From Fimbriosthenelais zetlandica (Eukaryota): DNA of 64,000 nt. Positions 5,831-52,031 of this stretch are shown one piece after another. Where the stretch lies: assembly GCA_977030845.1 (NCBI GenBank), contig OZ365114.1, forward strand, positions 20,646,001 through 20,710,000, written 5' to 3'. Both the position numbers and the translations under genes were made by a program. How positions within the stretch are numbered: position 1 is the first letter of the stretch; each line of letters opens with the position of its first letter. The notes under the pieces are model-generated. The model had not been told where the DNA came from. It worked only from the letters and a program-made list of their open reading frames with translations, and searched no databases.

Positions 5831-6992
5831 CAACAAGTAGTTATGATGGGCGCCATCAGGTTAAACCATTGAGACACTGACCAGTGGTCAGCTTCCTCGT
5901 GGGAGACATTAGATCAGCTCTGTATTGACCACATGCTTGATCCCTGGACCTCGGCAATGACCCCACCCCATGTTTAAAATAATTATTCAGTTAAAAAATA
6001 GGCATCTAGGGCTCAGTCTTCTTCTTACCTAATTAATTTCAAAGCATTTTACCTTATTGTGTATGCGATATAATATCATTCAATTTTTATACGGACTTTG
6101 TTGAAAAAGTAAGATTTATTCTCAAATATTCCTACGTTGGTTCAGGCGAGGTGTAGTGAGAATGTGACGCGATATAGGCCTATTATCGAGATTTCTTATT
6201 CTATGTTTTTCATTCTGAGAGGTTTCCCTCAGTATCGAAGCACCAAAAACGTTGTATTATGATTCATATAATTAAATTTGGGAAGTTTGAAAAGTAGAAT
6301 TGAATAGGAAATTTTAAATGTTAGGCACCGAATACCCATACTTGTCGATAAGCTTCCCATATCGGACGCGTTCTCTGTTGGAACCCCTAGTAGTATATGG
6401 CAAGTGTTCACTGCTCCATGTATTGTCGTGGCAAGAAGTATGTCTAGCTACAGTTTAAAAAACGTCTTTTGCGTCTTTTATTATTTAAAAGAATTCAAAT
6501 AATCTTCTGAATGTCACAAGGATCTAATTTGGAAAGTTGACGCCACTTCCCACCCCTTGAACATTACATTATTTTAGGAGCACCGATTTGTGATATTTTG
6601 TTTTCATTTTTATTTACATATCCTTTTAATCTTAGACCTTGGACGAACTGTAGTTGTTGGCATCAATACAGAAATAAGTCAAAAACCACAAAATGGAACT
6701 CTTTTCTTAAAAAATCTCAAACCAAGCTACTTCTGGCCTGGAAGTTCAAGGTGGCGCGGTGTGGGGGCGCCACTGAGGCGGTAAACCGGTCATGAGGCCT
6801 CGCCAAGTCCTCCTCTAACTCCTTGTCTGTCTCCTCAGGATGTGACGACATTATAACAATCAATGTCTAATTAAATCACTGTTGTCATGGAAACCGCATG
6901 GATGTCCATCTTTTAATGATGACAGTAATATGGTGATGAGGATCAATGACTAGCTCACTGTGTATGTTAAGAGTATAGAGAGACCAGACAGA

Positions 6993-7375: not shown

Positions 7376-9685
7376 ATAATAGCAGTCCTCTTGGACCCGC
7401 AGAGTTAGGGGAAATATTTATCCATTGTTAAGATTAGATAAAAGCAGAAAGTCATAATTCATAGAGAAGCCCATCAGTGGGCGCCTTATAATGAGGTAAG
7501 TAGGTCCTCTTTCTGCCCCCCGTCTCTAGATGAGAAGGCGCGGTGGCCGGGGGCCAGTGACGGACTCCCCGCTGTGTTGGGGCCGTCTCTAGGCCAGCTG
7601 CCGGCCGGTCTCACCCTCCCATGGCCGCTCCACGGCTCATACATCACTCCTTATGTGACATATCGCTTGTCTACAGGGCTTTTGTGCAATGCAGGACGCT
7701 GTGTATGTACACTATAGCAGTGTTGAGGCTTCACTAAGTGAGGTGGCTTCACACCCCAATAGACAACAGCCACTAACACCCCTCTACATACCCTACCCCT
7801 AGAGACTGAGATCCTCACTACAGTTACCATTCTCTAACACGCATACCCTTATAACAGCACCCTTTTAAATTGACATTTATCAATTATGTTCCATACAGAC
7901 TAACTATTGAAACAGCTGTTTTTTTATGATCCACGGTTAATTCGAGATACTCTCATTTTGAGTAGGAATCGTAGGACAATTCTATTCAAAATATGTTGGG
8001 GTCAAATTCATTGGTTGAAAAGGACATTCAAGTGTGGAATGACTGTGCTCAATACTCCATATTGAATGAATTCATGTAAGTGCATGGAGGGGAGTTGATT
8101 AAGTGGGTAATAATATCTGATTTATACCGCTTTTACCACATCTTGTTTATAATGAGCCCTAATTGAGATCTTCTTTAAGAGATTGCTGTCATGTTTCCCC
8201 TTGTCGCCACTCTTTAATATCAGCCTTTCTCATGGGCAAAGATGGCTCAGTCAATTAAAGGTAGCAAATCATCAGTATACACATTACAATGATTTAAGGT
8301 CATCGCCAAGTCTGAGACTGACCGTTACTTCTTTATTGGAAGATAAAAAACCTAACCTGGATGGGCCTACATATTTATAAAATATAAACCAAGATCCGTT
8401 ATATACCTTACAATATTTTATTTCTGTCATGCAAACTCGACTATAGAGGACATGGGCCTGCATAATAAGGATTTTATTTTTCGAGCTGGTCCAGGTCGAC
8501 ACGCGAGTTGGAGAGAGCAGGATTTCCTATATTAGCAAATTCAGACGAGGAACTGTCGGGTGTTAATGGTTTTTTGACATGTCCATGATCTCTGTGTGTA
8601 GCATGTTTCTGTGAACGTGAGCATGTCACCAGACCAGCATGGTGACAGCAAGCACTCGCCTAATGCTTAATATTACCTATACCCACAGTCGTTATCAGTC
8701 GATATCCCAATCTGTCTCCACATTCTGACAGGTTCCGCATTCATCGTCATGTTATTTATATTTCTCTGTTTGTTTTGGGTCTTTATTACACTTACTTTAA
8801 TTATTATATTCTTGTTATTTATCTCATGAAGTCGTGCGCTGAATGGCGCTGTTTTGTGTTAACTACTGTGCCAATAACACACGGAAGGAAGTGGATGGTG
8901 ATATAGTGTATACGATCATTTATTAATTTCGTATTAATTTCACAATTGATTTAATTTAATACCAAGATATTGTGTTAAAATCCCCATATGGAATGGTCCT
9001 TTCAAAATCAATGAACAATGACGTACACTAGAGGAATGAATCTTTAAATTTGGATTCATCATAATTTCATGAACTATATATATAGGCCCTATATCTGATC
9101 TTTGCAGTTGTAATTACTGAAGCAGCTGCTTAATATGTTTGCCATAATGCCAATATTCTGGGAGAGGAAGCAAGGGAAGACACAAAAGGCAATCAGTGTC
9201 ATGTCTGCTTGTGACGGGGGAAGGTCAGCAATTAAGTGCTTGATGCACTGATTGGTCTTCAAGTTAAATCTGATCTGTGTGCATGTTGGCTTCCCCCACC
9301 CTCCACCCCCATTCCGGTCATCACGCTGTAGTTATAGGCCAAGGCAATTGGATTGGAGGCGTGATTTTGGAGTGCAAAATAGAAATATAATTATCTCAGT
9401 AAAAAGGGTTTTCTTAAGAATGATATTTTCCTTGTGCATTTCAACGTTCGGCATGTCCACCATTTATCAGTAGCATTAATACTGCTGGCATCATGGCATG
9501 AGCTAACGAAACATGTATATGGTGTTTAGCCTTAATTGCCGATAGCAACAACAATCAGCCATACCACAGCCGCCTGTGTATGGACTAACCAATGTTACCA
9601 ATGTAACCCGAGAGGTGATGGCTGTAAAATTCAATTATTCCTTACCACCAGGTCCATTGACTTCCAACTGAATATTTGATGATGG

Positions 9686-9822
9686 ATGATGGGTGTGTGG
9701 GTGATATGGGTGTGTGTGGGTTGGGGTGTGTGAGTTGGTGTGGGTAGCTGCATGGTGTATTGTGGTTATCAGTATGTGTGAATGTTGTGTGGTGGGGTTG
9801 TTGGGCAGGGTGGGAGGAGGCA
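9686..9822. repeat. TG/GGT-rich low-complexity tract
   Basis: gggtgtgtgg-type repeats. Confidence 0.7.
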
Positions 9823-12800
9823 CACCTGTCGGTAACCTGCTAATCGATTATTATCTAGCGTCAGGATCAGGATAATTGATGGATGAACAGCTCTGACCCC
9901 TGTCAATGATCATCAGTCTACTGTACATCATATGTAATCGTCTCTCATCTCCCTCCTGACAAGTCTTGTAACTTGAGATGGTGCTCCAGCTTTGTATGAA
10001 TATCAAGTTGATATTCATATGAAATACAACGATTAAAATACAGAGCCTTGATCACTGACTGACTAGCTAAATGATTTATTAACCTATTGACCGACGCAGG
10101 CCTGACTGTCATGGTGACATCAAGGCCAATGAATTTTATTCTAATGTTCCAATGAGGGAATAATATTGAAATAACTAGGTCATTCTGAAAATCATAATGA
10201 AAGAATGCATGCGTTAAATTTATGAAATATTACACACGAGAATATGCCACCCTCACTTATTGCAAGTATCGTCCCATTATATATATATGCTCGCCCTTGG
10301 TCCCAGGATTTACCCCAAAATTTATCGACAAACTCGAATTTTGTTGAACATGAAGTGGACGAACTTTATTAAACTCAGTACATTCGAAGTATTGGAAAAC
10401 TTTAGACAACAGTAAGACAAAAATCTTTCCTATTATATAAAATTTCAAGATTAACCTAAAGCTAAAAATAAGCTTAAGTATTAAACCATTATTATTGCGG
10501 AAGACTGTAATAAATTATAAAGCTATGTTTACATTTTCGCACATTGATCTGTGTACACTATATACAGCGTGAATAAGGTCATTGCCCCATTGATCTATTC
10601 ACATATTTTAATAATATTAATATAATACATGTATAATATAAAAAGTCAACAATTCCCTTAGTTTTATGTAGTTTGTCATGATGTGGCAGTTATTGCACCT
10701 TTAAGCCCCATATCCTCTTAGCCGTTCCTATAGGTACGTCAATTGACAATTTGCAACTGAGATACGGAAAGACGAAGAGCATGATATAGTTCCTCAAACA
10801 TATTTGATAGTATAATATTATATTAAGTCCTGACAAAAAACATACATTTATGTCATAAACCTGATAGCTATATATACATGCGTGTATTAACATAATACTT
10901 GATCTGTCTTTGGTCTTGGTCCCCTTCTTATCTGAAGGGTTTTCGATGAAAATTTCTTATCGTTTTACAGGTTTGAGAATATTTTATACATGTACACGTG
11001 TATGACTATAATTATTTCTTTTGGCCAAGAAACAAATGAACAAAACTAAAGTCCCATGTCCACTGGGCCATTTCCTTTACATATACGTCAGTCGGCATTT
11101 CTATAGCTTTTACCTGGCAGTTATACTCGTGGTCTTTTTCTTGACACAGTGACTCACATTAGTCCTAACTGCATGAACATAACATTCTGATGAGATCCCA
11201 AGTTTGTCCCTGATATAAACATGCTCACATAGTGGGTGGGTAGCAAGGAATATGTGCAATGGTGTATAGTTAAAGCTGCATGAGTGTGTACAAGCAGGCA
11301 CCGTGAATGCAATGTCCATAGTTATGTACATTTTTGGCAAATGATTCCAATGGGTTTTTCTAAATGCATTTAATATACCAAATTCACAGGCATTCTACCA
11401 GTTCCGGTTCTGACATAAATTGTATCTGTGGAATAGAGAAACGTGCAGGGAGGGTATATATATTATGGTCGACTCTTCCCATGGGTTTGACCCGTTTGAC
11501 CTCAGCACAATAGGAAAGTGGACAAGGGTCAGCCCTGTACTCACCCCATGTGTGTATAATTTGATGAGAGTGGTCAGGTAGATTGTGTGTTTACATGTCT
11601 GCAGGTAAATGCTCTATACCCCTAGTGTTTAACATATGACAGATCCCACGATTTTCAGTCCGCGATTGGACTCTGTTCAATCCATGTATAAAAGACAGGT
11701 ATGTACATGAAATTTGTGCACACCTGAATAATAAACATCAAACGTATTGAAGAATCAAGGCATTAGTCAAGTTTGTTCAGTGCCATTTTCCATCCCAAGT
11801 CATTTGGGAAGGAATAATTTCTTGTTAAATAGTGTGTCTAGTGAGAACAATATAGAATCTATATATACATGATGATGTGCCTGTGAAGTTGGCAGCACAA
11901 TAAAAGGGGACATATCACCTAAATGTAACCACCTACCAAACGTCCCCTCTGGCTCCATAACACTGCTTTACTGCCTTTTGTATAATTAAGCTGTGCCCAA
12001 AGAAGGCTTAGCTTGTTTGGACTTAAGGTGCATTTCCCCCTTTAAATCTTTGACCTTGTCTTATAATTATGCTGCACTGCATTAGGAGTACCAACTACTA
12101 GAGGACATTTGGCTTATACATGAGACCTTTTAAACACATTTATTTTTTTATATCTTGTTGTACATGTATGGCATTATGTAAGTTAGATGTAGAGAGTCGC
12201 TGTACTAGTGCAAAGATTATAGCCTATATGGTTTGCTATAGTTGAGTGCCAAGAGAAGAGGAGGCCACCCCTTCAGCTGGAGGAAGGTGGGTGAGTAGTA
12301 AAGGTCACAGCTGGCTGACCTCACGCAAATGTCGATCCCCTCTCTACTATAGCTTTGGCACCGGATCAGGGGCCTCTTGACCCGGACTGACAGTCTTTCA
12401 ATGCACAAAGACACCAATAGTGCTTCTAACGTGTGACCCTGGGTCACACCTTACTCATTAGACCGCTCAGAAGGGGCAATGAAATGCATGAAGTCGCCAG
12501 CAAGAACCAAAATGCTCTGTCTGAAGACGAAGTGCTTTTATAAGATAATGCCCCGAACTATAATGCTCTTGTATCTTGCCAATTCATACGTAGAATCCAT
12601 ATCATTTCACTTTCAACAGTTGTCCCAACAAATATACTGTTGTTCTACCCATACTAAACCTGCAGTATAGCTTCTGTATATCATGGGTTACATACAACCT
12701 ACGTTAACACGTTAGCATTAACACTCTCACTCTAGCAGTTCCTTTTTGACCCTTTAGGAAGCTAGCAAACCAAGCAGCAATCTTCCACCTGCACTAAGCT

Positions 12801-15100
12801 TGACCTCAGACAGTAAAGGACAAGCCGAGCTTCCGCCTGTCACACTTGTGAAGCCACAGCTATTGTGGACTGAGTGGAATAATTGGCCTTCAAATTATCC
12901 TCACCCGCCCACCTATTTCATATAGGATTTAATGCCATAGACTTTATAAACCTAACCCCTTTTAGATTGGCTTGAAAATGCATGTAATGGGCTTGTGGCA
13001 ATTGAAAAAAGGAAAATACTTGAGCTTGCCATTCAAATGGTCTGATTCTATATGGAAAAAGTCCAAACTCTATAACTCTATGAATATGTGAAGAAGAATG
13101 GATATAGCAAGAAAGGGCATGGTGCATTATTTTTATACCACATATACCTTAACCATAAATGCCACTGGGGTGGGGACGTACATTGTATGGGTATATAACT
13201 GTTGCCTATTATATATAGCATGAGGTACCTCGGGCTTCCAACAGCACAGGGAAGTCAAGTTCTCACGAGATCAATTGGCACGTAGGAAACCTCTATGGGG
13301 TGTTCCTCTCCAAGACATATTGTATAGAGGAGGTCTGCATAATGGCCCTTGCTCACACACACTCTCCCATCGTCGCCAGAATTCTTTGTCTCATGTCCAC
13401 TAGGCCTGAAAAGCACCGATTGTGTCTTGAGGATGCTAGCAAGATTTTCCCACACTCTCGTCTCATATTATGTCCATAGGATGAAAATAAGCTTCTCCTG
13501 AGATTCGTCTTCTATACATAGACACCACAATGTGTCTGTGTGCGTGTATGTATGTTTTATCTGTGTATTAGGTGTGTGTATTCCAGGTGTTAAATGAGTC
13601 TGAGTCATAGGGTGTGGGCCCCTTGCCCAGAGCAGTTCCAGTGTCTATGTATGTGGCACCAATGTGGTGCCTCTTTATAATTTATAGGATAAAGACTCTG
13701 TTATTAAAGGAACCCTCTATATACAGCCTCTTACATTCCAATAAGTCTAATGTAGAGTGAAATCCCAATGGACAGTACTACTCATTTGGTATAAGGGATA
13801 TTTATTCTGGAAGTGATTTTTGGCGAATTGTACCCGAAATTAGAGTGCGGATTTTGCGTGTCTGATGTTCCCATGCATTGCTTTAGAATGTGCAGTCCTG
13901 TCTATACTCACACAATGGGAGCACACTTGGCATCGTGTGTCGCCTCTTGCACAATACATTTCCTAAGTCAGGGGTGGTCTCACGGCTGGTAAGGTCTCAT
14001 TACTCACGACCACACTTACTTTACATTGTAAAAACTCTTATATTACGGTATCTCACAGTAAAGGCGATTACACCCAGTGAACATGGAACCGTTAGATTGA
14101 AGTTTGTTAATCGTTTTGATGGGCCAGCCTGACGAACCCTGAATTAAAACGTTTATCAAACCATCTGTGCGACGGATTCTTAAAAACTGTTGAAGAATAT
14201 ATGATTTTCACACTTATCTTTATATGTATGGACAAGTTTATGTAGTTCAATAATTCCATTAAATCCACGATTACATTAAATAAAACAATAAATATAATTT
14301 GATGTCTATATGTATGTGATGCCCTGGTAACAAGTCTAAAGGGGTAGAGTGCTGGTAAATAGATAATACTTGGGAAGTGGCATTGATTGCTTTCAAAAAA
14401 TTGAACCATAACCATTCAAGGAATATAGCATGGAAATATAGTATAGCGATAGAACATGCATTATAACTGGTGTCATGTCTACATATAGGAACCAATTCTG
14501 ACATTTTGGCAGTGACGCGTTTCTGTTCAATATATATAATCATGCATTGAATAATATGACATTCTGAAGGAGAAAATAGCTGACTTTGTCAAGCATTATG
14601 ACAATTAATAACTAATATAATACATGTATGTTACAGTTTAACAAATAATCTTACAATAATTATAAATAAAATATCTATATATTCACATCAATTTAACATC
14701 CACTTATGTTAATATAACCTTGACATATTCAACCATTTATAATATAGATTTTGAATTATTATACATTTCATATTGCACGTTCAATTCCTTTTGATATATT
14801 ATAACAATTATTTACACTTTGTGTTCAGTGTATGTTCTAGCACTTAACTGTCTATAAAGGCTTGGGTTCCAACCCAATTTTTGTGGTACCAGAAAACTTT
14901 TCTGTTTTGATTATTCTCCAAACAGTTTGCATACAAAGGAGTCAGAGGTTACATAATTGGTGGCCATTTTGACTGTCATGCCTACTTTCAAGTATTCATC
15001 CTGAATCGAGGTGTAGTATTTCAAATAACCCCCTGCGTTTTGATGACTTCGGATAATTGGACAGATCTGTAATTGTTCTCAATAGAAGCCAGAGGTTTCT

Positions 15101-15106
15101 TTTATT
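15101..15106 (-). terminator. Candidate polyadenylation signal (AATAAA) of ZF-A
   Basis: First minus-strand AATAAA I found after the stop, about 520 nt downstream. Confidence 0.3.
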
Positions 15107-15624
15107 GAAACGTGCCAAGAAAGCATTATTGGCATCACCTTTTCTGAACGTTCTGCACTAATGCTTTCACCTGGAATATTTGATAACCTGGCCCATGCAG
15201 TCAACCACCCCATTTTTTCATTGCACCTCCACGGTTTTTGTGTATGTACAAATCTGTCGTTGGTTTTCAGAAGCAGGACCTTTATAACCGTGTGTAGTAA
15301 TTCGGTTGTAAACACAGGCGCCATGTCAAATGTTGTATGACAGAACGTGTGTTTCCATGGTGAACAACCACTCCGGGAAAGATTCCAACACAAACTTTCC
15401 CATCTCTAGCTCTCTCCTATACAATAACTCTTCACCTAACATGCACATATACAATTCTCCACTTTTTCTACCACATCCTAAAAAGTTGTCGCTTCAGTTC
15501 ATGATAAAACGCTACCGTTAAATTCGCACCTAATATTTTGATAGAATTGAATAGTAAAAAAACATACCTTAGACGGTTGCTGTCTATATATTGAGATTAA
15601 AGGGGTATGGGTCATTTACTAAGG

Positions 15625-17119
15625 TTAATTGGCCAAATCGACCACATCAATTAGGGCGTTGGAATCATCTTCCACATCCACCGGGGATAAAGGCATGTCA
15701 TCGACCGTGTGGAGATGTTCGTCTTTGTGGTGGTGGTGGTTGGTGGTGGTCGGAGTGGTGGTGCTAGGGTGGTGGTGGTGGTGGGGAGATGAAGATAGCC
15801 TCCTTGATATAACTGAGGGTTCTGTAGTTGTACTATGGGCTTGTGTAGGTGAGGGGGAAGAGGAGGAGAGGGGAGGAGGGGGTCGTCTATCAGAGGATAG
15901 TGAGATATGGGAGGGGAAGACAGGGGAGAAGGACGGGGTAGAGGAAGAAGCTTCTTCTTTATGAGGGGAACAATCCATATCATTGTCTTCTGAATCAGTC
16001 GACTGTCTTTCATGCACCTTTTTGTGTCGCTCCAAATTGGACTTGTGACTAGTAGCGTAGTCACACTGACTACACATATAGTCTTTCTGTCCACTGTGGA
16101 CGGTCAGATGCCTTTTGAGGAGAGCTTTCCTACAGAAATTTCTCCCACAGAAGCGACACATGTAGCCGTTACTATGGAAAATGAGAACATGGTCGCGGAG
16201 GGAAGCTTTATTTTTGAACACCACCCCGCAGCATTCCAGGGCTTTGTCACACTCCTGATGCATGGTCGCTATGTGTCTTTTCAGATTATTTTTCCGGTCT
16301 GTAATGTAGCGACACTGCGGGCAGCCAAAGAGTTTCTTTCCCAGGGGATAGTGTCCCATGCGGGCCAAGTCAAGGAATGGGTTGGCAGCTTTGGCAAACG
16401 GGTCGGCGGCGGCTAGGTACTGGGAGGCAGCCAGGGCCTTGTCGGCGCCCAGGAATTGCTGGAGGTGTGAGAGGGTGTATGGAGATTGGGAAGTTTGAAA
16501 CCACATGGGCATTGACATGGGAAAAGCGGGGTGGTGGTGGTGGTGGTGTGGGTGGTGGGGGACGGCGGCCGCGGCAGCAGAGACCGACTGGCCGACTCCA
16601 CAGTGGCCGCCTCCACCGCCCCCTCCTCCGCCACCACCTCCACCTGGCGCGGCGTCCTTGAGTCCCATCATCACGGCCGCCGTCCGTTCGTCTACTCCAG
16701 GGTAGGCGGGCGGGCAGAGACCGTGGAGGTGCGCCGCGGCAGCCGCTTGTTGCTGATGAACTCCTGTACCTGACCCCCCTCCTCCTCCGGGCATGCCTGG
16801 ATGGTGGTGATGGTGGTGGTGGAGACCTAAATGTGGGTGGTGCCCTGTAGGTACTTCCTTTGTAGAACATGGACTGCTGGCACTGGAGAGACTGTTGTTA
16901 TTGGTACAGGAGGAAGGGACTGATTTAAAGGCGCTGGTGGAGGATGTAGAGGAGGAGGGTGGGGAATGGGAGGGTAGACCCGGGAGGGAGGGACCACTGG
17001 CGGCCGGGGATCCTCCCGTACTGGGCCCTCCACCTCCTCCTGGACCTCCTCCTCCAGCAGGTCCTCCTCCTGCTCCTCCACATTGCTGGCCCATGGTGGG
17101 GCCCATCATCAGGGGCCAT
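15625..17119 (-). CDS. ZF-A: main coding exon of a 4x C2H2 zinc-finger transcription factor (~505 aa with the upstream micro-exon); fingers at 16006-16329; poly-Gly/His/Ala/Ser low-complexity regions
   Basis: Long ORF ending at TAA 15625-15627. Fingers: CPQC..HIATMH, atypical ECCG..HVLIFH, CRFC..HLTVH, CSQC..HKKVH with an SGQKDY linker. The ORF-track start (17136) is a TTG inside a pyrimidine-rich acceptor (tttttctcttgtctattatcag/cag), so the exon starts at 17122 or 17119 in phase 2. About 95% aa identity to ZF-B over the 108-aa finger array. Confidence 0.92.
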
Positions 17120-19351
17120 CTGCTGATAATAGACAAGAGAAAAACTCATAAATAACTAGCAATCATTATAAGCCCTAAAACCCTATAAATCTAAAACCTC
17201 GCTAAAAATAATAAGGTTACATTTGTACCAAAAAACTGTTCTATACTCAATACAAAAATCTACAATACAAAAAGAAATTGATTAAAAGTCTCTCCTTTGA
17301 GACTACGTGGAAACCTTAATTTGGAATTTTGAGGAAACAATTAAGAATTAGAAAGAGAGAAGTGCATTTAGGAGCTGGTGATTGGGAATTGGTAATGACA
17401 GTTTACAAAGTCAATATGTTTCTTTACATTAATGTCCCGCCCTCCTATTATACTCCCGTTCCGGGTACACATATAAACCATTGTCCACCTTCCTCCTTCT
17501 CACTATACAACTCAAAGGCCCATATAATAAAATTTCACAATGATTTCAAAATCGCGTGAGAGTTAATGTTGCGAGGGGAGCCTTTGGACGCGGGATGACG
17601 CGGCTCTCCCTCCGCTTCCGGACTCCCCATGGTCCGGCGTGAACAGACCCAAAACAAGGCCGTCCTACCACGCTTATTTCACGTGTATACGTTAAATGAT
17701 TTATATAATTGCTTAGTATTACGGCCACAATTCCCGTTATAATAAAACAGGACTCTTTTCCTAATTTCCAGGACCACAATGACGCATATCCCGTCGCTTG
17801 TCGAAATTCAAATATTTGTTCAAATTGATATTCTCTGACGCATTCCCATTTCTATTTTGAAAGAATGTTTATTAAAGAGTCCAGTATTTTGAGAATTATA
17901 AAATATTAGTTTGTTTATGCCCTTTCGTGCGACTAATGCCATGATATTAAACACCATGATATACCCATTAATTTTACATTAGTCGCGTTAAACATTTGAA
18001 ATATGATAAGAGCAGTAGACAGTTAACATTGCCATAATATTTCTATACATAGTTTATGGTCAAGCATCTCACAGTTTTATTTGGTATAAGACGCATGTAG
18101 TTGTCTCTTATAATGATAGGAAATGAATTTATCATCTTTAAAATACAATAAAATGCATTTCATAACAGGCAAAAATTGGCCCTTCGATTTGGGTGCCGAC
18201 CAAATGAAATTCGAACGGCGTCCAAATTTCATATGGACGCCATCCAAATTTGACCCCTCGTAAAACGCGTGGTCGGAAAGTGCATTACAAGAAATAAAGC
18301 ATTTTTCTCTCATCAAATATATTGAAAGCAACATAAAGTCCACTTGGATTATGATAAGTGGTTGTTGCTGCTGAGATTTGCTGGTATTTGTTGAATGAAA
18401 CATAACTGTAGCATGACATGTCAAGTGGGATCACGAATAATGAAGCAGTGAGCTGGCCAGTCCTCACCCACCTCCTCTCCCACATGTGCCAGTATCATGT
18501 GGGTCACTATTAATAAACATGATGCACTATTAGTCCTGTAAATGGTCTCCTATAGCCAGACACAAAAATCCATCTACATCAACATTACTGCTGCCTTCAC
18601 AATAATAGATTCACCTGTTATTCTTTGTGTACATAAATGTCATCATCCACGTAACCGGCTTCCAAACACATTTATCTGTTTCAAGTACATAATTTGTCGG
18701 AGAGGAATGTATTTTTTTAATCAGATGTCATCGCTGATGAGATATTTTGTCCTCTCAGATAGTTCATGAACATGTCTCAACTTGAGAGTAACATCGGTAT
18801 TTCTATTTTAAGAATTGTTATTGCTAAAAAAATAACTACGTGTACAATGTATACCAATTTTCTGTTTGAAGGATGACGCGATTGAATGCAGTAGCTGGAC
18901 GCGCGGACCGAACTGCTCTTCATGGCAAATAATCGTGTAACGCCCGGAAAACTCGACTCAGGTATGTATCGACATGTATATAGCATAAAAATATCCTCCA
19001 CATACACTGAGGTGACTATATATACCATCTTTTTATAAGGAAGGTGATTTTTTTTCTAATCGCTAAATGTGTCACAAATATGTGAAGTTTGCGTCAGGTG
19101 AAAATATTTCTTTGTGTTAACAGACAAAACAACATACCGTTCACCATGAAAATATTGTCCCAATTACCTTCAGATTTACTTGATTATTTCGTATACCCCA
19201 AAATGATGACAGTATAAGATATTTATAATGATAATGCCACCTTCATAATAATTCGCGTCACTCTCGGATATTATGATGGATATTATCTTTCACATAGATA
19301 TAGTAAATTAATTGTAATATATTGGAGAGAGATAGGAAGAGTCGGTCTTAC

Positions 19352-19374
19352 CTGAGATTAACAGAGAGATACAT
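19352..19374 (-). CDS. ZF-A start-codon micro-exon (M-Y-L-S-V-N-L-R/S)
   Basis: Minus strand reads ATG TAT CTC TCT GTT AAT CTC AG|GTAAGA. The strong donor is phase 2, matching the 17119/17122 acceptor. Same length from MYL and same phase as the ZF-B micro-exon. Confidence 0.78.
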
Positions 19375-20016
19375 GATGTTGATCTGTAATTTAACCCCTC
19401 CTGGGTGAACCGTGGAGGAAGCGAGGGCCTGGAGGGGACAAGCTCCCGTATACTGGTATTGAACCCCCTCTTCCTCCTACCCCTCCTGTCGCTCAACCCA
19501 CTCTCCTGCACTTCCTTCACAAATGTTTGCACCTAATCATATAAAGTATATAGATGCAGGAGGAACAAGTCCAATCCCCTCCAGGGGGAAGTTGAAAAGT
19601 GATCCTTATCAAATCTTATCACTCCATTTTTGTCTGTGTCCGTCTCTTCCTGTAATGGCATTAACACTGATATTTCCCCGCGTGAAGTTACAGAGTTATG
19701 TCAGGGATTTTGACTGCCTGTTCCGTTTTTGGTGTTTGTATTGACTGACTGAGTTTGTGGTAAGAAGAAGTGGTCTAATAATAATGACAACAAGAGAAAA
19801 TAGGTGTGGTTAAGGTGGAATGGTGGTTTTGGGAGTTCCTTGAGACACCTTCCTTTCACACCACTGGCACCGCTCAAGTGTCAAAGTAGTCCGCTACTGA
19901 GTACATGAAATAGGAGCGCAGCTAATTTATGCCCCAGGTATAGGGGGAGCGAGTGAGGTGGTGCTGGTGGTGGGAGAGAAGGGATGAATGAATGGACGCT
20001 CCGTTGGTCATGCCCT

Positions 20017-20070
20017 ACTCTCTTTCTCTCACTCTCACTCTCACTCTCTCATTCTCACTCACTCTCTCCC
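20017..20070. repeat. (CTCTCA)n tract adjacent to the ZF-A promoter
   Basis: ctctcactctcactctcactctctcattctcactcactctc. Confidence 0.8.
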
Positions 20071-20125
20071 AACCCGCGCGCTGCTTCTTTCTCCTCCTGT
20101 CTTCACAACTGCTGTTATCCATGAG
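20063..20125 (-). other. Possible non-coding first exon of ZF-A (5' boundary approximate)
   Basis: A|GTGAGT donor at 20062-20057, about 80 nt downstream of the E-box/CCAAT module. Candidate acceptors lie just upstream of the ATG (exon start 19400 or 19383). This mirrors the arrangement in ZF-B. Inference, no transcript data. Confidence 0.35.
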
Positions 20126-20142
20126 AGAAATGAGAAATAGAC

Positions 20143-20169
20143 CACGTGACTGAAAGCGACCAATGAGCG
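20143..20169. promoter_or_regulatory. ZF-A promoter module: E-box CACGTG - 11 nt - CCAATGAGCG (USF/bHLH-ZIP + NF-Y type)
   Basis: CACGTG 20143-20148 and CCAAT 20160-20164. Identical spacing and an identical CCAATGAGCG occur upstream of ZF-B. Confidence 0.62.
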
Positions 20170-22419
20170 TCCATGAATCTGACCCATTCACTGGTCAATG
20201 CTGAGTGATCGGTATAGTACAGCGCTACAGCCTCCAAATTCGTGACAATTCTAGACCAAAAAATGATAAAATATTCGTTCTCGCAAATTTGTGTATACTT
20301 CATACACAGAAAACATGCAAAAACTATTAAAGAAGTGAGCCACTTTTGAGAAACATTTTTGAGAAACAATTTTACTTTCTTTCCTTTTCGCCCCTCCACC
20401 CTTTTGAAAACAAGTACTCGTCTATCCCTTCATTCCCGTTTTGTGTGTCAGTTTTAAAAGCACATATTTGTTCTCGTATGAGGCCGAGCGATATAGGGCG
20501 ACGCGACCGCGTCACATGCAGAGATAACTACATGGCTGAGACAGAAGAAAGAAAACCCCATCGCCATAGCAACCACGGGGGGTCCTCTAGTAACCTACCC
20601 CTCAGAGGTTCCCCTCACAAGTTTCTCTGTAATTTCTGTCATTGCCGTGAGGTGGCTTTGGGGATCGAGGGGAAAAGTGCAGGTACGACCTGGTTCTGTC
20701 CATTGACATGGTTAAAAGCTCTAGTCAGAATGGCCTATACTCCCGATTTCAGGGACAAAAATGTGAAGACTTGTCCCTTACCTTTCAAAATCCACTGCAT
20801 TATGAAAAGGCCTTTCATATTGGTGCTTTATTTCAATGATCAATTTTTGAAGTGAACCAAAATTGCAATATTTCTTACTCGAACTCGAACATCAGCTGCT
20901 CCCGTAGCCTTCCGCGGGTTCAATGTATTGGGTGGGGTGTATCCTATAGGATGTATACTATGCACATAAGGTTCAATGTATACAATATACACCTTGATGA
21001 ATGGTTATTGTGTCGCACTGTATCAAGTTCCCCTACGGTCAATTTAACAGCACCATTGTTGTGGTATATAGAGGGCAATAGGACCCAAATAAGTGTGTAA
21101 TTGTGGGATAGGGCACCAGCAAAAATATACCACTGACCACGATAAGGAGAGAGAGTAGGGGATGGATATGAGGAGACGGCTCAGGAGTGTAATGTACTCC
21201 TTTATGATAATTTTTTGACTGAAATTTATTTTTATAATGGAGAGGGTTATGTGTCATAGGCGGTGATGCAGTGAACACAGTAAATATTAATTATCTATGG
21301 GTCATGAGGCTGAAAGGTTGGGGCTTTAATGATTAATGCTTAACTCACGACTCCTGTGGATTTAAGCCTCACAAATTAGTCACAATTGTAATGAATCAGA
21401 GCAGATTTCATAGGTCCAATTCACACATTTAACCATATAAAGTGCGACTTTATAATCTAAGCATTTTTTTGATTATATTTAAATATCAAATTGTGTTCCC
21501 TATATGAGAAGAATCGTCATTCAGGTGTATTCCTTTTGTTTTTATTTTTAACCTAGACCTTTAACTTCGATCAGGTGAAAACCATTTTTCTACGTGTTTA
21601 TATTTGAGTTTTTACTATGATTTCGTAGCGTATTGATCCCTGGTAGAGTGCACGGCAGGATGACTTTACATGTGTACACAGATTGTGTCAATAATAAATT
21701 GGGCGTCAGGAGGAGGAGAAATGGACGCTTTCCGTGCAGGTGCAGGGGGAGGAGGTGGTGGCGGCGGCCACTTCCCATCCATCCTCCCCACACACCAGCT
21801 TGTTTATACATTTGTATATCAACATGTGCAATACGAGACAATGAAATATGATTCCCATTCAAAGTCCGTATGTCTTCCTGCATTGCTACACTTGTCTTTC
21901 ATGAAGGGACTTTTGGGAAAGAATTATGTGGAATCGGCTCATTTTACGAAACTTAAATTCAAATGGGTATTGTGAGATTCCCTCCAAAAGAAGCACTAAA
22001 TACATGACAGTCAGGACAACCGAAAATTTCACAACATTGTAACACATCTTCTCTTTCATTTGCCTCAACACCATTCCCTGCTAAGACTTTTACTCTATAG
22101 TATAGGAAGTATGAGAATCATCCATGTTTTCCATCTCTCGCCTCTTCCCTTCACTTCCTGTCCCTCCCTAAACACCAACATCTGGGTGTTTGTGGGTTTT
22201 TAAGACGTCGCCAGAAAGTCACAGATTTCTCTCTCACTTCCCCTGCTGCACCATCTGAGTTCCTATAGGCCAAAGCCAACTGTTTTTGACAGAGGTCGAG
22301 ATTTATGGGTTTTTCTCACACGACAGGTTTTCAATTTCCAACTCGCCGTGCAGGAGTTGCATGCATCTGTCGGTCTGGTGCCTCGCCTACCTGCCGCATG
22401 GGGGCACCTTGACTTCATT

Positions 22420-22460
22420 CACCTTTGCGCGCATGCGCCCATAAAAAGCGGACGCGCATC
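22420..22460. promoter_or_regulatory. NRF1-like element
   Basis: GCGCATGCGC 22429-22438 followed by CATAAAA and GACGCGCAT. Confidence 0.35.
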
Positions 22461-25029
22461 TTTCTTAGCTTGTATGCTGATAGATGAATCTCTAGAGGTC
22501 AGGGGCTCATGAAGGGGCCAGTACAAATCAAAACTTTTGAAGAGCAAATGATCACAATCTAACCAAGCATAAGTCTTAGCGATCGATAACAGTGCTTTGA
22601 GCTCCGACATTTTCTGGTCTAAAAATGAGAGGCTCCTTTCCCCAAAAGAACTAATTTAAGGTGTCTCGATGGGACCTTTAAGATTCCCCTTCTGTGCCTC
22701 TTTGGGTTTGCCTCAAGTCCTTGTATTCAGCATGTGAGGTGATAAAACCTGTCATTGGTATGTGATTGTTTACTTTCAAACTCGGCGACAGATTGAAAAT
22801 CATCCAAAATATCCCATCATTAAGTTAGTAAAAGTCCTCCATAAGAAAGGAAAGAAAGTGTCATTGTTGTCAACCTGTTAACAAACCATCCAGCACTCCG
22901 ACTATAAATCATTGTATTTTGCCTTACTTCACAACTGTGCCATTTCAAGGCAAATATTATATCAAAACAAGTGTAGTGTCAAGTTTTTTTTCTAAATCTT
23001 TCACATAGAAATTATTATATGATGGAAATATAACTTTCAACGTCGGATTATTACAGTGAATGAAACCTATAACATTCGGTGAGATATGACTGTCCCGACC
23101 TCAATTTTTAAGCCTCGATTGTTTAGCTGAACTGGGTGTTCAGAGTTGTTACCAAAGGCGTTAATGGGATTGCATATGTTCCTTTTAAATGCTTTTTTGG
23201 CCCGCTCATTAGTGACCGGCGTGTTGCGAGTTAATTGCTTTTGTTACCTGTCTGTGTGAAAGGACCTGAGGCTATGAGGAATATAGAACACAGGTCATGG
23301 AGACTCCCTCTCTTCTCTCGCCACTCACACAAAGGCATCCCTCTCCAGGTGGGATATGTAAATGGTGGAGGAAGGGGGGAGAGAGGAATAGATAATGTAC
23401 TGGCCGTATCCTTCATTCGTTATTGCAACTTTTCTGGCATAACATTTCTATGAAAATTGGATGAATACGACTCATACAACATCTGCCAGAGTAAAATTTT
23501 TAGTTGTGCTGGAGGAAAGGATTTGGTATACAGTGCCATATGCCTTCTCCACTTCCGGATTTTTACGTCACCTACTAGAAATAATTTGATACTTGACTCA
23601 TTCTAGAATTTGCACATGAAACAATACAAATGTTCATATATTTCCTTTCTTAAAACTTCCAGGCTGGTGTATATATGGTAGAACTGGGAAATCTTTATGC
23701 ATAATTCAAGTAGATTATGCATAATGAAGATAGGAAGGCCGAGTCCAGAAATAGTTGAGACTCGCCTGGGTTACTCATTAACATGTAGTGAGCAGGAGGC
23801 ACATTAAGCTATGATTTATACCACCTGATGGAAGATGGCGATTTAATAGAAATTTTATGTAGAGCAGTGGATCGTAATTATCTCTCTCTGCTCCTCTCTC
23901 CTCCTGACATCCACTGGTGATATGGTGGGTCTGATTTGTAGGGCCCTCCTAAAATAGATGGATTTAGACTATCATCAATTTTGGATCCCCTCATAGTGAA
24001 TTAATTTAATAAATTCATGGGGAATTGACTGTTTTCAATACATCTCTATAGTCAAACATACAATTCGTGGTATGGGGAATAATAAAGATCACCTGAGAGG
24101 AGGCATATCGTGCTGATGATCGCTGATAGAATGACGCTGTCCATAATGAGACGGATGCATGTGGTGAAGCCACAATGGGGGCTGATCCCATAATTACTAT
24201 CAGACATATTGTATATAGAGGTGATTATGGTCTTGGCATGTTCTCATGTGGTCTACCAGGTCACGTCTGATTACCGTTATCTACCGGTAAATATACGGCC
24301 AGGTGTGAGGCGTGTGTCCTATCTCATTAAAATTACCTCTACCTTAACGACTTCATGAGTATATAGGCTACATATCTCCTTCATGGAATGTATCTCTTTC
24401 TTTGTATGCCTAGAAGTATCTCATTGCACCTTATTTCTAGTCGGATCCCTTCGTAACTGATCCCGTCTACCCATCCCGCACCATTGAGTTCATTTTGAGT
24501 AGGCATATTGAAACAATATTGATGACGTAGTTGCGTCGTCACCTCCACCCTTACTTGTCTTTTTAACGGAAGTCTTCCCTTTCAGGCACCGGACAAGTAA
24601 CCATCTGGAAACGGAAACTATGAAAACAACGCCACGCCTGAGTGGCGGCAAGACATGTAATTAACCGCTTGGCTGGGTGTTGGTTGGAATGACCAGGCTT
24701 GGGGCAGGGGTAGGGGGTGTGGCAGCGAAAGGGAGGGGGTTTTGCCTACACACAGGCTGTTGTTTTCCGATGATAACTTCCTGGCACTCGGACATGGAAG
24801 CCATGAGTTGGAGGCTTTTACAATACATCACATATTACCACCCGTATATTCAATATTGAATGGATTAATATTCATATTTTAAGGGTTAGAATGTAGGATA
24901 TTTGACTGATTCAGTTCCTGCAACCAGACCACCTTGATGAATCAATAAATCAGCCAAGCCGCGTGTAGAATTAAGCATGACAAGGTTTAATGGTTCTAAC
25001 AAAGTAGCTACATCGCTGACGCTTAGCGG

Positions 25030-31830: not shown

Positions 31831-34800
31831 GGCCGGATAACATGCCCCAAGGCGCCAAGAGAACACCGCCACCCCATTCAACTTTTCCTGCCTTCTTTAT
31901 GCGTTGTATACAAGGTATACTTATGCCTGAAAAGCCTCAGCAGAAGGGCTGGTAATGTGAACACTGTACCAAGCACCGTTCAGCCCTGCTCATCCACACA
32001 AAACTGTATTATGCTATCATCCACACCCGTTATTCAAACTGCCCTTTTTCTGCATAATCACCGCATATATGACTCTGATTGCAGTCTTCCCAGGACAATT
32101 ATTTACCAGTCGCTGCCATATTTTGGTGAAAAATTGAAGGCCTACAATTGCGCCTTGAGGAACCCCGCTGAGCATTCAGAGGTGCCCTGTAGTCATTCTA
32201 CCGTCCATATCACGTACCTGATGGGCACAACTGAGTATCAATTCTTGCAATACGAAGGGAGAGTATATGAAATGTCCTCTAAAACCATCTGGTAGTGTGA
32301 AAATTGATATGTTTCTACAAGAATGATTTACATAGCTGCCTTCATTGGCGCTGACCCGTTTCATTTTGGGGCGAGAAAATTTCATTGATTAATGATGGTA
32401 GATCTTCTCAGTTTCAGCCATGAATATAAATCTACAGGCTGTGTTTTCTGTTCCTTTCACCATCCCAAATATTTGCTATATTTGTATCGATGATTATCTA
32501 GGCAGAGATTATACTTTCCTAATGGCTTCCTCTGACCCAAATTACACCATTTAGTGGACCTACTTTTACTTCCAAATGTTGTAAGCAACTAAACCTTATA
32601 CAAGATGCCGATGACAGTGAATAGTTCTGTTTGAATGCAATTATAGAAAGGACTTGAGACCTGTGTATAGTATGAAATCCACTGACTTCATATATTACCA
32701 AGAAGTTTAAGTGACAGTCAGATTAGTCCCAGTTGATGAGAACCCTTGCTTTAACACCCCCTTGTGTTCCCCCTGGTAAATATGTAACCACCAATCATGT
32801 CCCCCAGCCACTCATTGAGCCCAACAAATTGGTGAAATCACCCCACAACACCTTTCCCCGATGCAGATGTAATTTCAAGGCCGTTAAAGAAATGGCATTT
32901 AAGCTATGGCCCTGTTGGTCTACGTCTGTCTCCCAAGTGTCAGCAGCGACACCTAGAAACAAAAGTGGGAAGGTGAGAACGAATTGTTTTTCTGGCCTGG
33001 GGCTGGCTTTTGTTTGGGTCTGTCTATTAGGCTGGGAGCTCTTACACTGCCTCAGGTGTGGTAGTCAGTGTTGGTCGGTAGATAAGATCGCTCCCACTCA
33101 CGGGCCGCTGCCTTCCTCTCCCCGATAAGTCAAAAGATATCCGGCCTGTGCCTCTGTTTGGCATCCTCAGGAGGTAGAGACCCTTGTTGGCTCACAAAGA
33201 TGACATTTCTGACGCTCAGGCTCACTCTGGGACAACAAAGATAGCATCCCCGCCTGAAGTGACTAATGAGGGGGGAGCATATATACTGTCACAGCGGTTC
33301 CTGTTTTGGACATGGCTTAGTGGAACCTGAAAATTAGCAGGAAGCCATTATCTGATCGCCAGAAGCCACAACTGTGACTCTATCTTATAAAAGCCTTTGT
33401 TTCTTAACAGATGGGCTTCTTTGGGGGCCTTCAAAGCAGCATGGTGACAATCAAGATTTCCCGCTGTCTGTGATAAGAAAAATATCTCAGCAGGAATTTG
33501 AAGCTCATAAAACACATTGATTACTTCATTAGTGGATTCTTTCAAAATTTAGTGTTCTTGCTTTCTATCTTGATTCTCTTCTCATGTTTCCACTAAGTTC
33601 AATTTATCTAGCAAAATTATGTCTCAGATATATGAATTAAACTTAAGTTAGATCTGGTACTAGAAAATGCCTGGCATACCGAAGTATGAAAACAAGGAAA
33701 GTTGATTAGCCTACATGCACACATGAGCGCCTTGGTACAGTGGCGCCCCTCCGATTTGGTGCGGCCATCCAGAAAACTGAGCTCTTGTCCCAAGATCTTC
33801 CTTCTCTCGCCTCGGTTGACCTGTGAAAGATACCTCGAGATAGTTTTGCTGGAAGGCACGAAGTTATTGAGATGCGATGGGCGTCTGAACGGGCAAGATT
33901 GATGTGTCCAAACAGACCAAGTGTTAGCAACTTGCACCAAGACATCCTTGCCTTCTGGAGACATTCAGTCAGCATGGGGTCCCCGTCACCAAGTCTGAGC
34001 CCTGACAGCAAAGGATGGGCTCAGGCAGCGCTTGGCTGACTTGGTGGCAAAAATAGGTGGAGGGGTTGAAATGTAGAGGCTCTTCTAATCTGTGTACATT
34101 CTACATTATGCCATTTCCAACCTCAATTATTGGGTAATAGTACTCATTGTATGAGGAAATTATATTGGCTTAACACGGTATCTATTATTGTTGTGGGATG
34201 AGGTATTATATTTATCTGGTTCTTCACAGTTTCACAAGTATCGTATTGTGGGTGTATCAGAGGAAAAGTTTGGAGATGAAGTGTGCCTATAGGTCTCCAC
34301 TGTAGCATGTGCCCATGGTGGATAAAGTTATTGAATACACCTACCAATATGGTGTGGGCAAAGTCCCAGCCATCAACACTGGACAGGCATCTGTTCCAGA
34401 GTGCTTCTTCACAGCCTGGACTGCACACATTATCACATTATAGTGACAACTAGGTATCACTTTACCTCATTAAATCCATCGCTTAAGTAATGCACGCTCC
34501 CCTCCAGCCCGCCCATACCCAGCAACAATGTCCAGAATCAAATCTTTTAGTAACCATAACAACCGCTTATCATCAATGGCAATGACAAGGTCCTCATTAT
34601 AACTTCTCGTGAAAAGGCCTTGGCCGTACTCTCAATATCCAAAAGAGCAAAGAGGTCTTTGATGGCGAGGCATGGTTCTGATACCTAATATGCTTTATAT
34701 TGTTTAATGAGAGCACATTGAGGACCGGCTTTTTTCTATGGGGATGAATGGGTCACCATCTTGCCCCAGGCCCGTTGGTATAGAGTTGCTATGATAATAG

Positions 34801-49628: not shown

Positions 49629-51033
49629 TCACAATTCTGGAGTCCACCTTTTCGGTGGTAGAGTTTGAAGTGAAGGTGGATTTCTGATAATGTCTAAATG
49701 GGAGGGTTTGTTTAATGCTTGATGCAGACGATGCTGCTGCTGTTGATGCCTTGAGAGTTCGGATGCTCTGTTAGGCAGAGTAGCTTTGTCTGCAGTTGGA
49801 TGATGGATATGTGGTAGAAGGGTTGGGGTAGGAGTTGGTGGATGTACTGGACCCACTACCGTACCTCCTGGAGCTCCAGTCACAGGAGCATGAACTGGAG
49901 GAGAAAGAGGAGGAGCTGAGAGAGGAGGTTGATGAGGTAAGGTGATATTGTCTTGTAAGCCTGATACCATGTCTATATCTACCACGTCAATGAGTGAATC
50001 ATCCTCATTATCATCCACCTCTATATCAGACAGGTTCAGATCCTCATCCTCCTCATCCAGATCATCTCTCTCCTTGGAACTCCTCCTGCGCAGTTCAGAA
50101 TCTTCGTTGCCATGTCCACGTTCCTGATCAGATGAATGGCATGTGGATCTTTCAGTGTACACACTCTCACTGTCTGATCCGTCACTTCCGTTCCTCTCAT
50201 GCACCTTTTTGTGCCTCTCCAGATTAGATTTGTGACTTGTAGCATAGTCACACTGACTGCAGAGATAGTCTTTCTGTCCACTGTGGACGGTCAGATGCCT
50301 TTTGAGGAGAGCTTTCCTGCAGAAGTTTCTTCCACAGAAGCGACACATGTAGCCGTTACTATGGAAAATGAGAACATGGTCGCGGAGGGATGCCTTGTTC
50401 TTGAACAGAACCCCGCAGCACTCCAGGGCCTTGTCACAGTCTTGGTGCATGGTTGAGATATGACGTTTGAGATTGTTCTTTCTGTCGGTCATGTACCGAC
50501 ACTGAGGACAACCAAATAGTTTCTTCCCGATGGGGTAGTGTCCCATCCTGGCCAGGTCAAAAAAGGGATTGCCAGGGTTTCCGAATGGATCCAGAAATTG
50601 GGAGGCTGCCAATGCTTTCTCATTGGCCAGGAATTGCTGGAGCTGGGATTGGAGATTGAAAGCAACAGCAGCCTGCTGGGCTTCATGTTGCTGGTGATGT
50701 TGCTGTTGGATCCAATGAGCCGCGGCCGCAGCGGCGGAAGGTGAGGAGGGGACGGGGACGGGTCGCGGAAGGCCACACACTGCGGGCGGCGCCGTCCGGT
50801 TTTCAATGGCCATCCTAGCAGCGCTAAATCCAGGCAGAGTTGTGATAGAGGGTAGTGAGGAAGCGTTAGCTGCAGAGACCGGTGAAGGTGGAATACCTCC
50901 ACGGGCACACGGCCCACCTAGGCCCGGTACTAACTGGCGCGAGTAGGGAGATGGACGGATAACTCCCCCAAAAGTTGGAGATAGCTGCTTTTGGTAGGCT
51001 TCATTGGTTGGTTGTCCCAGTGACGTGGGAAGT
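49629..51033 (-). CDS. ZF-B: main coding exon of the paralogous 4x C2H2 zinc-finger transcription factor (~477 aa with the micro-exon); fingers at 50193-50516
   Basis: The frame stays open 73 codons upstream of the ORF-track Met (50813) to the acceptor ttttgtcatcttttcag|A at 51033 (phase 2; LPTSLGQPTNEAYQKQ...). Same four fingers as ZF-A. Confidence 0.93.
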
Positions 51034-52031
51034 CTGAAAAGATGACAAAATTCATAATGTATTTCCTATTGATTTGACTGCAAGTTTGGTTGGTTTGGTA
51101 GGTAACTATTTTCTGCTGCGTAATGAAATGCTTTAAAGAATGAAATCTTAAGATTCCATATATAACGCATCTCCTATTACTTTATCTAAAAGAAAATATT
51201 ATCAAAAAAAGATAAAAATTCACTGAGTAATTTCCATAACGATGATGAGGATCATCATGGATTGAATTATTACCACAATGTGAGATTAATGACATAAGTA
51301 TTGTACTTCTATAACAATCTCCATATCCAGGTGTTCATCTTCAACCCATCTTATGTATTTAATCGGTCAATCACCAAGAATATGTGAGCTATATGATTAC
51401 TTGAAATTCACAGCTGGGAGGTGGGTTGAATAGTAATGAGTTTTGAATCAATTCAATGTATATACATGTACAGGTTGTGATTAATATGATGTATGCTTAG
51501 AACCTGTGCCTCAATGGACCAACATGGTCCAGGGGCCCTCCTATATAGTCACTCATTATTCTGATCCTTAATTATTGTGATCATAAAAGTTGGCCACACT
51601 CGCGCTGAAGGTGTCATATTAGTAATTAGATATGCATATAAAATGCTCTCTAGGTATACACATATTTTCAGCTACAATAAAATTATTCATAGGTCCAGGT
51701 CATTAGAAAATGTTTGAAGAGAGGTCAAATGAGAATTTGATTTGGAGAATCTCTATATTCAGTGCTAAATAGGTAGATCAGTGCACTGCTTGCAGCATAC
51801 ACATATTGAAGCCATATTAGTATTGATCAGTGACTATTAAAGCTGCGATGTGCCCAACTGCAAGCTCTAGGCTTCCAATAGCAACCAATACTATACACAT
51901 ACTAAGTTAAAAGGCAGTGTATCTGTAGCAGATGAAGATGCTCATGTTCAGGTACTCACATACCAAGTTATTTGTTTTATATTCTGTCAGGTTATGATAT
52001 ACGACAATGAGTGTATGGAGTGATTACTCAC

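What the first reader, a model, noticed from the sequence alone, without database searches (positions are those of the whole stretch)
16078..16203. 126-nt patch nearly identical between paralogs: gene conversion or a dual-coding element
Seen: 16078-16203 versus 50265-50390 differ at only 3 of 126 nt, all synonymous, covering the end of finger 2 and finger 3. The flanking finger 1 and finger 4 codons, though almost invariant in protein, differ at roughly every second or third codon. The patch contains GTTACTATGGAAAA (16168-16181 / 50355-50368), one mismatch from an RFX X-box. Inference: recent ectopic gene conversion homogenising the central DNA-recognition finger, or selection on the nucleotide sequence (exonic enhancer or RNA element).
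Basis: partly seen in the sequence, partly recalled or inferred. Interest (0 to 1): 0.7.

Follow-up and report, generated by a model that had tools for sequence, protein, structure and literature searches.

The report
Gene conversion between zinc-finger paralogs
Two neighbouring copies of an old zinc-finger regulator gene have copied about 126 bases of their DNA-binding region from one copy to the other (gene conversion), which is an ordinary process; the same stretch also changes unusually slowly at silent sites in related animals, and that is not yet explained.

Summary
Window 16078-16203 and 50265-50390 differ at 3 of 126 nt, all synonymous (pS 0.12). The flanking finger codons are saturated (pS 0.83; Fisher p 4.5e-9; permutation p 2.5e-5).

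The two genes, A (15625-17136, minus strand) and B (49629-50813, minus strand), are old same-strand paralogs 34 kb apart. They align as DNA only over 367 bp of the finger domain.

A related species has both orthologs (Ax, Bx), and colinear conserved non-coding blocks confirm the orthology. In that species the same patch differs at 20 of 126 nt. A and B each differ from their own orthologs at 15-19 of 126. The patch therefore groups A with B, while the flanks group orthologs. This points to ectopic gene conversion after the species split, with a weak lean to B as donor. It is either two tracts of 59 and 54 bp or one patchily repaired tract.

Nucleotide-level selection alone fails an additivity and relative-rate test. 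The RFX X-box, dual-coding and RNA-structure readings are not supported.

Unexpectedly, orthologs from another clade show a 5-9-fold drop in synonymous change centred on this same stretch. B-Bx shows a milder drop. A synonymous-constraint element may therefore coexist with the conversion.

No sequencing runs were listed, so the assembly could not be checked. The scan has noted similar conversions elsewhere in this genome.

The parts
15625..17136 (-). Gene A: open frame of 503 codons for a four-finger C2H2 protein (finger 2 atypical). It is the ortholog of P0008 in a related species.
49629..50813 (-). Gene B: paralog of A, with an ATG-to-stop frame of 394 codons. Coding-type conservation with its ortholog P0001 continues about 85 codons upstream of this ATG.
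16078..16203 (-). Patch in gene A (codons k55-96): end of finger 2, finger 3, and the linker to finger 4. This is the converted segment.
50265..50390 (-). Patch in gene B, the partner of the conversion. B is weakly favoured as the donor.
16145..16203 (-). Identity run 1: 59 nt identical to 50332-50390.
16132..16144 (-). 13-nt island holding all three A/B differences (16132, 16138, 16144). At 16132, A matches Ax and B matches Bx, as expected for an unconverted site.
16078..16131 (-). Identity run 2: 54 nt identical to 50265-50318.
16007..16373 (-). The only stretch of the A locus that aligns as DNA with the B locus (50194-50560; 86.4% over 367 nt). It is the four-finger domain.
16060..16251 (-). 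Codons k39-102 (finger 2 start to finger 4 first Cys pair). This is the position of the synonymous-divergence trough seen among orthologs of another clade.

Best explanation
A and B are old tandem paralogs on the same strand, 34 kb apart, in a spiralian four-finger C2H2 transcription-factor family. After this lineage split from the related species that carries Ax and Bx, a short non-allelic (interlocus) gene conversion copied the finger 2/finger 3 coding segment from one paralog to the other. B to A is weakly favoured.

The product is either two abutting tracts of 59 and 54 bp, or one heteroduplex of at least 126 bp repaired patchily, leaving a 13-bp island. The encoded residues were already identical, so the event is silent at the protein level and visible only at synonymous sites.

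Shown: the identity, its statistical excess, the switch from orthologous to within-genome grouping, and the lack of homogenisation in the other species. Inferred: the recombination mechanism itself, the direction, and the idea that a slower synonymous rate in this stretch helped the tract form or persist.
For: 1. Patch pS is 0.12 against 0.83 in the flanks.

2. Orthology of A with Ax and of B with Bx rests on colinear conserved non-coding blocks on both sides of each gene, on diagnostic residues, and on the flank tree (A,Ax),(B,Bx).

3. Patch distances per 126 nt: A-B 3, A-Ax 19, A-Bx 16, B-Ax 20, B-Bx 15, Ax-Bx 20. Flank distances are 36-53 per 240 nt.

4. Parsimony-informative sites (AB|AxBx: AAx|BBx: ABx|BAx): patch 6:1:0; flanks 6:16:5. 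Fisher p 0.004.

5. The three-point distances B-Bx 15, B-Ax 20 and Bx-Ax 20 fit a clock-like tree ((A=B,Bx),Ax), with about 7.5 changes on each of the B and Bx branches. The 6 AB|AxBx sites and the 7 Bx-only sites match those branch lengths.

6. Without conversion, A-B should be at least as diverged as B-Bx (14 of 41 codons). Seeing 3 or fewer has P = 6e-5.

7. The loci share no other alignable DNA, so this is not a recent segmental duplication.

8. The tract length, the same-chromosome position and the same orientation are typical of interlocus conversion (abstracts of PMC3966223 and 10.1101/135152).
Against: No reads could be laid on the loci, because no run was listed, so the assembly is unverified.

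Only one comparator species has both genes, and it is near saturation at synonymous sites. The patch ML tree is therefore poorly resolved: holding A+B together costs 0.42 lnL, and holding A+Ax or B+Bx together is not rejected either (p-AU 0.32 and 0.31).

There is no GC3 rise in the patch, so there is no GC-biased-conversion signature.

Before conversion, the paralogs probably shared identity runs of only about 23 nt, judging from Ax-Bx. That is short for initiating recombination.

A genuine synonymous constraint over the same stretch means part of the similarity could be maintained by selection.
Confidence: 0.85

Rival explanations
1. Purifying selection on the nucleotide sequence alone (an exonic enhancer, RNA element or similar) has kept both paralogs at the ancestral sequence since the duplication, with no copying between them.
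For: Among five orthologs of another clade, the same stretch is the most conserved DNA of the whole 3-kb locus. Synonymous codon differences are 0.08-0.16 there against 0.33-0.58 elsewhere (p 1e-5 to 1e-9). B-Bx shows a milder drop: 22/62 against 159/282 (p 0.003).
Against: Ax and Bx differ at 20/126 nt in the patch, and A-Ax shows no drop (28/62 against 160/314).

If A and B were frozen at the ancestral state, Ax-Bx should be about A-Ax plus B-Bx, roughly 34. It is 20.

A relative-rate check shows that B has changed as much as Bx relative to Ax (20 against 20).

The A/B patch sequence is not shared with any other lineage: 22-33 of 41 codons differ from other clades.

No candidate overlapping function was found.
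Confidence: 0.05
2. Assembly or polishing artefact: sequence from one copy was written over the other during consensus building.
For: No reads could be examined. Earlier notes of this scan report several domain-restricted identities between tandem paralogs in this same genome. That could reflect a systematic artefact as well as real biology.
Against: The loci are unique apart from 367 bp at 86% identity, so long reads are anchored by their flanks. Short reads carrying about 16% mismatches would not cross-map.

Three differences survive inside the patch, one of them in the orthologous state.

The genome is 447 Mb in 79 contigs, which suggests a long-read assembly.
Confidence: 0.05
3. Chance, or shared strong codon preference at highly conserved residues.
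For: The residues are invariant across the family.
Against: Permutation p is 2.5e-5. The equally invariant finger 1 and finger 4 codons differ at half of their positions. Orthologs use other codons at 14-19 of 41 positions. GC3 is no different in the patch.
Confidence: 0.01

Closest known systems
Interlocus (non-allelic, ectopic) gene conversion between tandem duplicate genes, as reviewed for Caenorhabditis paralogs (PMC3966223), for duplicated genes in general (PMC3924818) and for human duplicates (10.1101/135152)
   Same: It is a short non-reciprocal tract (tens to a few hundred bp) between same-chromosome, same-orientation paralogs. It is detected as a run of identity with a phylogeny that conflicts with the flanks. 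It is confined to the most similar part of the genes.
   Different: The paralogs here are very old: their flanks are saturated at synonymous sites and no other DNA is alignable. The human study describes this stage as having largely 'escaped' conversion. No GC bias is seen. The tract is silent at the protein level.
Synonymous constraint elements in coding exons (PMC4014394) and exonic enhancers, eExons (PMC4745165)
   Same: There is a sharply bounded stretch of about 190 nt in a developmental-type transcription-factor exon. Its synonymous rate is 5-9 times lower than in the rest of the gene among orthologs of one clade, and moderately lower in B-Bx.
   Different: The nucleotide sequence itself is not shared between clades. 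No overlapping function could be identified. The evidence comes from relatives rather than from this genome, and it does not explain the A/B identity.
Other domain-restricted conversions noted by this scan in the same genome (tandem Snail genes, SoxB2 genes, ABCE1 copies)
   Same: Tandem paralogs of regulators are homogenised only over the conserved domain. One note describes patchy tracts around a short divergent island, as seen here.
   Different: Those are unchecked notes on other loci. I did not test them.

Membership tests
Interlocus gene conversion tract | A run of identity between paralogs that significantly exceeds the identity of the flanks | tested here: met
   3/41 against 38/75 codons (p 1.5e-6); permutation p 2.5e-5; pS 0.12 against 0.83
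Interlocus gene conversion tract | Phylogenetic conflict: the tract groups paralogs within the genome, while the flanks group orthologs | tested here: met
   Informative sites are 6:1:0 in the patch and 6:16:5 in the flanks (p 0.004). The flank tree is (A,Ax),(B,Bx), and A and B have near-zero branches in the patch tree. The ML support on 126 nt is weak.
Interlocus gene conversion tract | Homogenisation is lineage-specific (absent in the related species) | tested here: met
   Ax-Bx is 20/126 in the patch and 49/240 in the flanks
Interlocus gene conversion tract | Donor and acceptor are physically close and the tract length is in the known range | tested here: met
   The genes are 34,187 bp apart on the same strand. 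Runs are 59 + 54 nt, or 126 nt in all. The mean human tract is 250 bp (10.1101/135152).
Interlocus gene conversion tract | GC-biased outcome | tested here: not met
   GC3 in the stretch is 0.56/0.66 against 0.59 in the flanks. This is a frequent but not a defining feature.
Interlocus gene conversion tract | The sequence is confirmed by reads that span each locus | not testable with these tools
   No sequencing run was listed for either gene
Synonymous constraint element | Synonymous rate among orthologs is well below that of the rest of the gene | tested here: inconclusive
   Met in another clade (0.08-0.16 against 0.33-0.58, p down to 1e-9; conservation peak of 0.94) and in B-Bx (p 0.003). 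Not met in A-Ax (p 0.49), which is expected if A was overwritten.
Synonymous constraint element | An identifiable overlapping function (second reading frame, RNA structure, known RNA family) | tested here: not met
   Every alternative frame carries stops in most species. Fold z-scores are -0.96 and -0.12, with no compensatory pairs. No Rfam match.
RFX X-box | A match to the consensus beyond chance, conserved in orthologs | tested here: not met
   There is one mismatch, at the final C of GTHNYYATRRNAAC. The window has 34 hits of that quality or better. In Ax and Bx the central AT and neighbouring bases are changed.
Dual-coding exon | A second open frame maintained across species | tested here: not met
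   The codon-aligned antisense frame is open in A, B and Bx only. It has 2 stops in Ax and 3-6 in the other clade.

The most novel reading that the evidence does not exclude
The finger 2/finger 3 coding segment of this transcription-factor family carries a second, nucleotide-level function: a synonymous-constraint element whose sequence is lineage-specific. Gene conversion is the means by which one lineage's version was installed in both paralogs. Under this reading the tract is retained, or even favoured, because both mRNAs or exons need the same element.
Probability: 0.2. Interest if true: 0.5.

Novelty: new member of a known kind. Interest (0 to 1): 0.27.

Why it matters
It is a clean, well-controlled example of conversion still acting on very old paralogs, but only where protein constraint keeps the DNA similar. 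There are three practical consequences:
- Trees or dating built from the finger domain of this family will mislead.
- dS between A and B cannot be used to date the duplication.
- Together with other notes from this genome, it suggests that domain-restricted conversion between tandem regulator genes is common in this species.

The secondary result is a sharp synonymous-rate trough at the same place in another clade. It would be the more interesting lead if it holds up, because it points to an unrecognised function embedded in a zinc-finger exon.

Tried and rejected
- RFX X-box: an ordinary one-mismatch hit, not kept in the orthologs.
- Dual coding: no alternative frame is open across species. 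The antisense ORFs at 16012-16416 and 50199-50456 simply reflect the absence of TTA, CTA and TCA codons.
- RNA structure: z -0.96 for the A patch and -0.12 for the other clade's stretch. RNAalifold gave no compensatory pairs.
- Rfam: no match anywhere in the window.
- GC-biased conversion: no GC3 shift.
- Recent segmental duplication: rejected, because only 367 bp align.
- Reads: two run searches listed nothing and one attempt failed as busy.
- Naming the family or the organism: the Atlas gave only generic zinc-finger names. Cluster look-ups and an accession search in papers gave no names.
- A third clade (L021 against L026) was too similar to be informative, with 2 synonymous differences in the whole gene.
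- DNA for the proteins P0003 and P0010 could not be fetched.
- Direction of conversion: 11 sites against 7 favour B as donor (binomial p 0.24), so it is unresolved.

Full report
**What is there.** The two stretches lie in two open frames on the minus strand. Gene A is 15625-17136 (503 codons) and gene B is 49629-50813 (394 codons from the first ATG).
- Both encode four C2H2-type fingers (Pfam zf-H2C2_5 and zf-C2H2). Finger 2 has an atypical Cys arrangement.
- The whole-genome search places the window at G000:C21:20646001-20710000. It finds four family members: A, B, a third copy about 20 kb before the window start on the same strand (L006), and a fourth 11 Mb away (L007).
- Homologs are abundant in molluscs, annelids and a brachiopod, and carry no informative names. 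The organism could not be named. It is evidently a spiralian invertebrate.

**The observation.** At a constant offset of 34,187 bp, the two patches differ only at 16132, 16138 and 16144, all third codon positions. This leaves identity runs of 54 and 59 nt.
- Among codons that encode the same degenerate residue, 3 of 41 differ in the patch and 38 of 75 differ in the rest of the finger domain (p 1.5e-6).
- pS is 0.12 in the patch against 0.83 in the flanks, which are saturated (p 4.5e-9).
- Only 2.5e-5 of shuffles give so clean a window.
- Outside the 367-bp finger domain (86.4% identity), the two loci share no alignable DNA. These are old paralogs, not a recent duplication.

**The decisive comparison.** Logan contigs from one related species carry both orthologs: P0008 (Ax, locus L016) and P0001 (Bx, locus L001).
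- L016 aligns colinearly with the A locus, and L001 with the B locus, through many conserved non-coding blocks. Orthology therefore does not rest on the fingers.
- Patch distances per 126 nt are: A-B 3, A-Ax 19, A-Bx 16, B-Ax 20, B-Bx 15, Ax-Bx 20. Flank distances are 36-53 per 240 nt for every pair.
- Informative sites (AB|AxBx: AAx|BBx: ABx|BAx) are 6:1:0 in the patch and 6:16:5 in the flanks (p 0.004).
- The flank tree is (A,Ax),(B,Bx). In the patch tree A and B have near-zero branches, but 126 nt give weak support.

**Why selection alone does not work.** If A and B had simply been frozen since the duplication, Ax-Bx should be about the sum of A-Ax and B-Bx, roughly 34. It is 20.
- B is as far from Ax as Bx is (20 against 20), so the B lineage has not been frozen.
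- The distances fit a clock-like tree ((A=B,Bx),Ax), with about 7.5 changes on each of the B and Bx branches. This agrees with the 6 AB|AxBx sites and the 7 Bx-only sites.
- The same fit gives a weak lean to B as donor: 11 sites against 7 (p 0.24), and 7 against 2 in the 54-nt run.
- Without conversion, A-B should be at least as diverged as B-Bx. The probability of 3 or fewer of 41 is then 6e-5.
- Taking 0-3 differences against about 7.5 changes since the split, the event falls in roughly the last fifth of that time.

**Anatomy of the tract.** The three differences sit within 13 nt. Three random synonymous hits among 41 codons would cluster this tightly with P = 0.02.
- At 16132, A matches Ax and B matches Bx.
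- The likelier picture is therefore two abutting tracts, or patchy mismatch repair of one heteroduplex, rather than three later mutations.
- In the unconverted pair Ax-Bx, the longest identity runs are only 23 nt. The substrate for the exchange was therefore short.

**An unexpected second layer.** Five orthologs from another clade come from five different samples, and their non-coding flanks are colinear at 78-92% identity.
- They show dense synonymous change over the whole gene, except from the start of finger 2 to the start of finger 4. There, 0.08-0.16 of codons differ, against 0.33-0.58 elsewhere (p 1e-5 to 1e-9).
- In a four-species alignment of the 3-kb locus, the conservation peak (0.94 of columns invariant) falls exactly on the homolog of the patch. 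It is higher than any non-coding block.
- Distances in this trough scale with those elsewhere in the gene. This fits a rate 5-9 times lower, not copying between genes.
- In the window's own clade, B-Bx shows a milder drop (22/62 against 159/282, p 0.003). A-Ax shows none (p 0.49), which is what overwriting of A by B would produce.
- The nucleotide sequence of the stretch differs between clades at most third positions.
- I found no second frame, RNA structure, Rfam family or GC3 shift that would explain it.
- I record it as a probable synonymous-constraint element of unknown function (a kind described in PMC4014394 and PMC4745165). It may have helped the tract to form, and it slows the tract's decay.

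The X-box-like 14-mer has one mismatch, at the final C of the degenerate consensus. It is one of 34 hits of that quality or better in the window. It is altered in Ax and Bx.

**Limits.**
- No sequencing run was listed for either gene, so an assembly artefact cannot be excluded directly. It is unlikely, because only 367 bp at 86% identity are shared.
- Only one comparator species carries both paralogs, and it is near saturation.

**Context.** Earlier notes of this scan report similar domain-restricted conversions between tandem Snail, SoxB2 and ABCE1 copies in this genome. I did not test them.

**Verdict.** This is a real and well-supported new example of a known process. It comes with an unexplained synonymous-constraint signal that deserves a proper multi-species test.

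Noticed in passing
L018:1577-1768, L019:1529-1720, L020:1565-1756, L023:10766-10957, L024:1190-1381 (homologous to window 16060-16251): Among orthologs of another clade, synonymous change drops 5-9-fold from finger 2 to the start of finger 4. The conservation peak of the whole 3-kb locus lies exactly on the homolog of the patch. No overlapping frame or RNA structure was found.
   Followed up: partly
G000:C21:20626287-20626634 (L006, about 20 kb before the window start) and G000:C21:31806438-31806767 (L007): There are a third and a fourth paralog of the same four-finger family. The third forms a same-strand tandem trio with A and B. Neither shows a conversion-like patch with A or B (27-50 of 126 nt differ).
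   Followed up: partly
window 50814-51066: The frame of gene B stays open for about 85 codons upstream of its first ATG. Against the ortholog it shows a coding-type pattern of synonymous change. The true start or a splice acceptor therefore lies upstream of the listed ORF.
   Followed up: no
window 8499-23274 and 52189-56395: Many short conserved non-coding blocks are colinear with the related species around both genes, for example 13576-13631 (96% over 56 nt) and 22274-22370 (90%). This is typical of developmental regulator loci.
   Followed up: no
whole window; exact hits at 6881-6894, 10724-10737 and 34550-34563: Matches to the degenerate X-box pattern with up to one mismatch number 34, against 13.8 expected. 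No shuffle reached 34. Some non-coding hits might be real RFX sites.
   Followed up: no
window 61073-62896 (-) and 58682-58821: An open frame of 607 codons has no Pfam match. A 140-nt run of N lies nearby and was left untouched.
   Followed up: no
L001 against L003, position 302 of the finger-domain alignment: Contigs of the related species from different runs differ by one synonymous T/C in finger 4 of Bx. This is probably a polymorphism.
   Followed up: no
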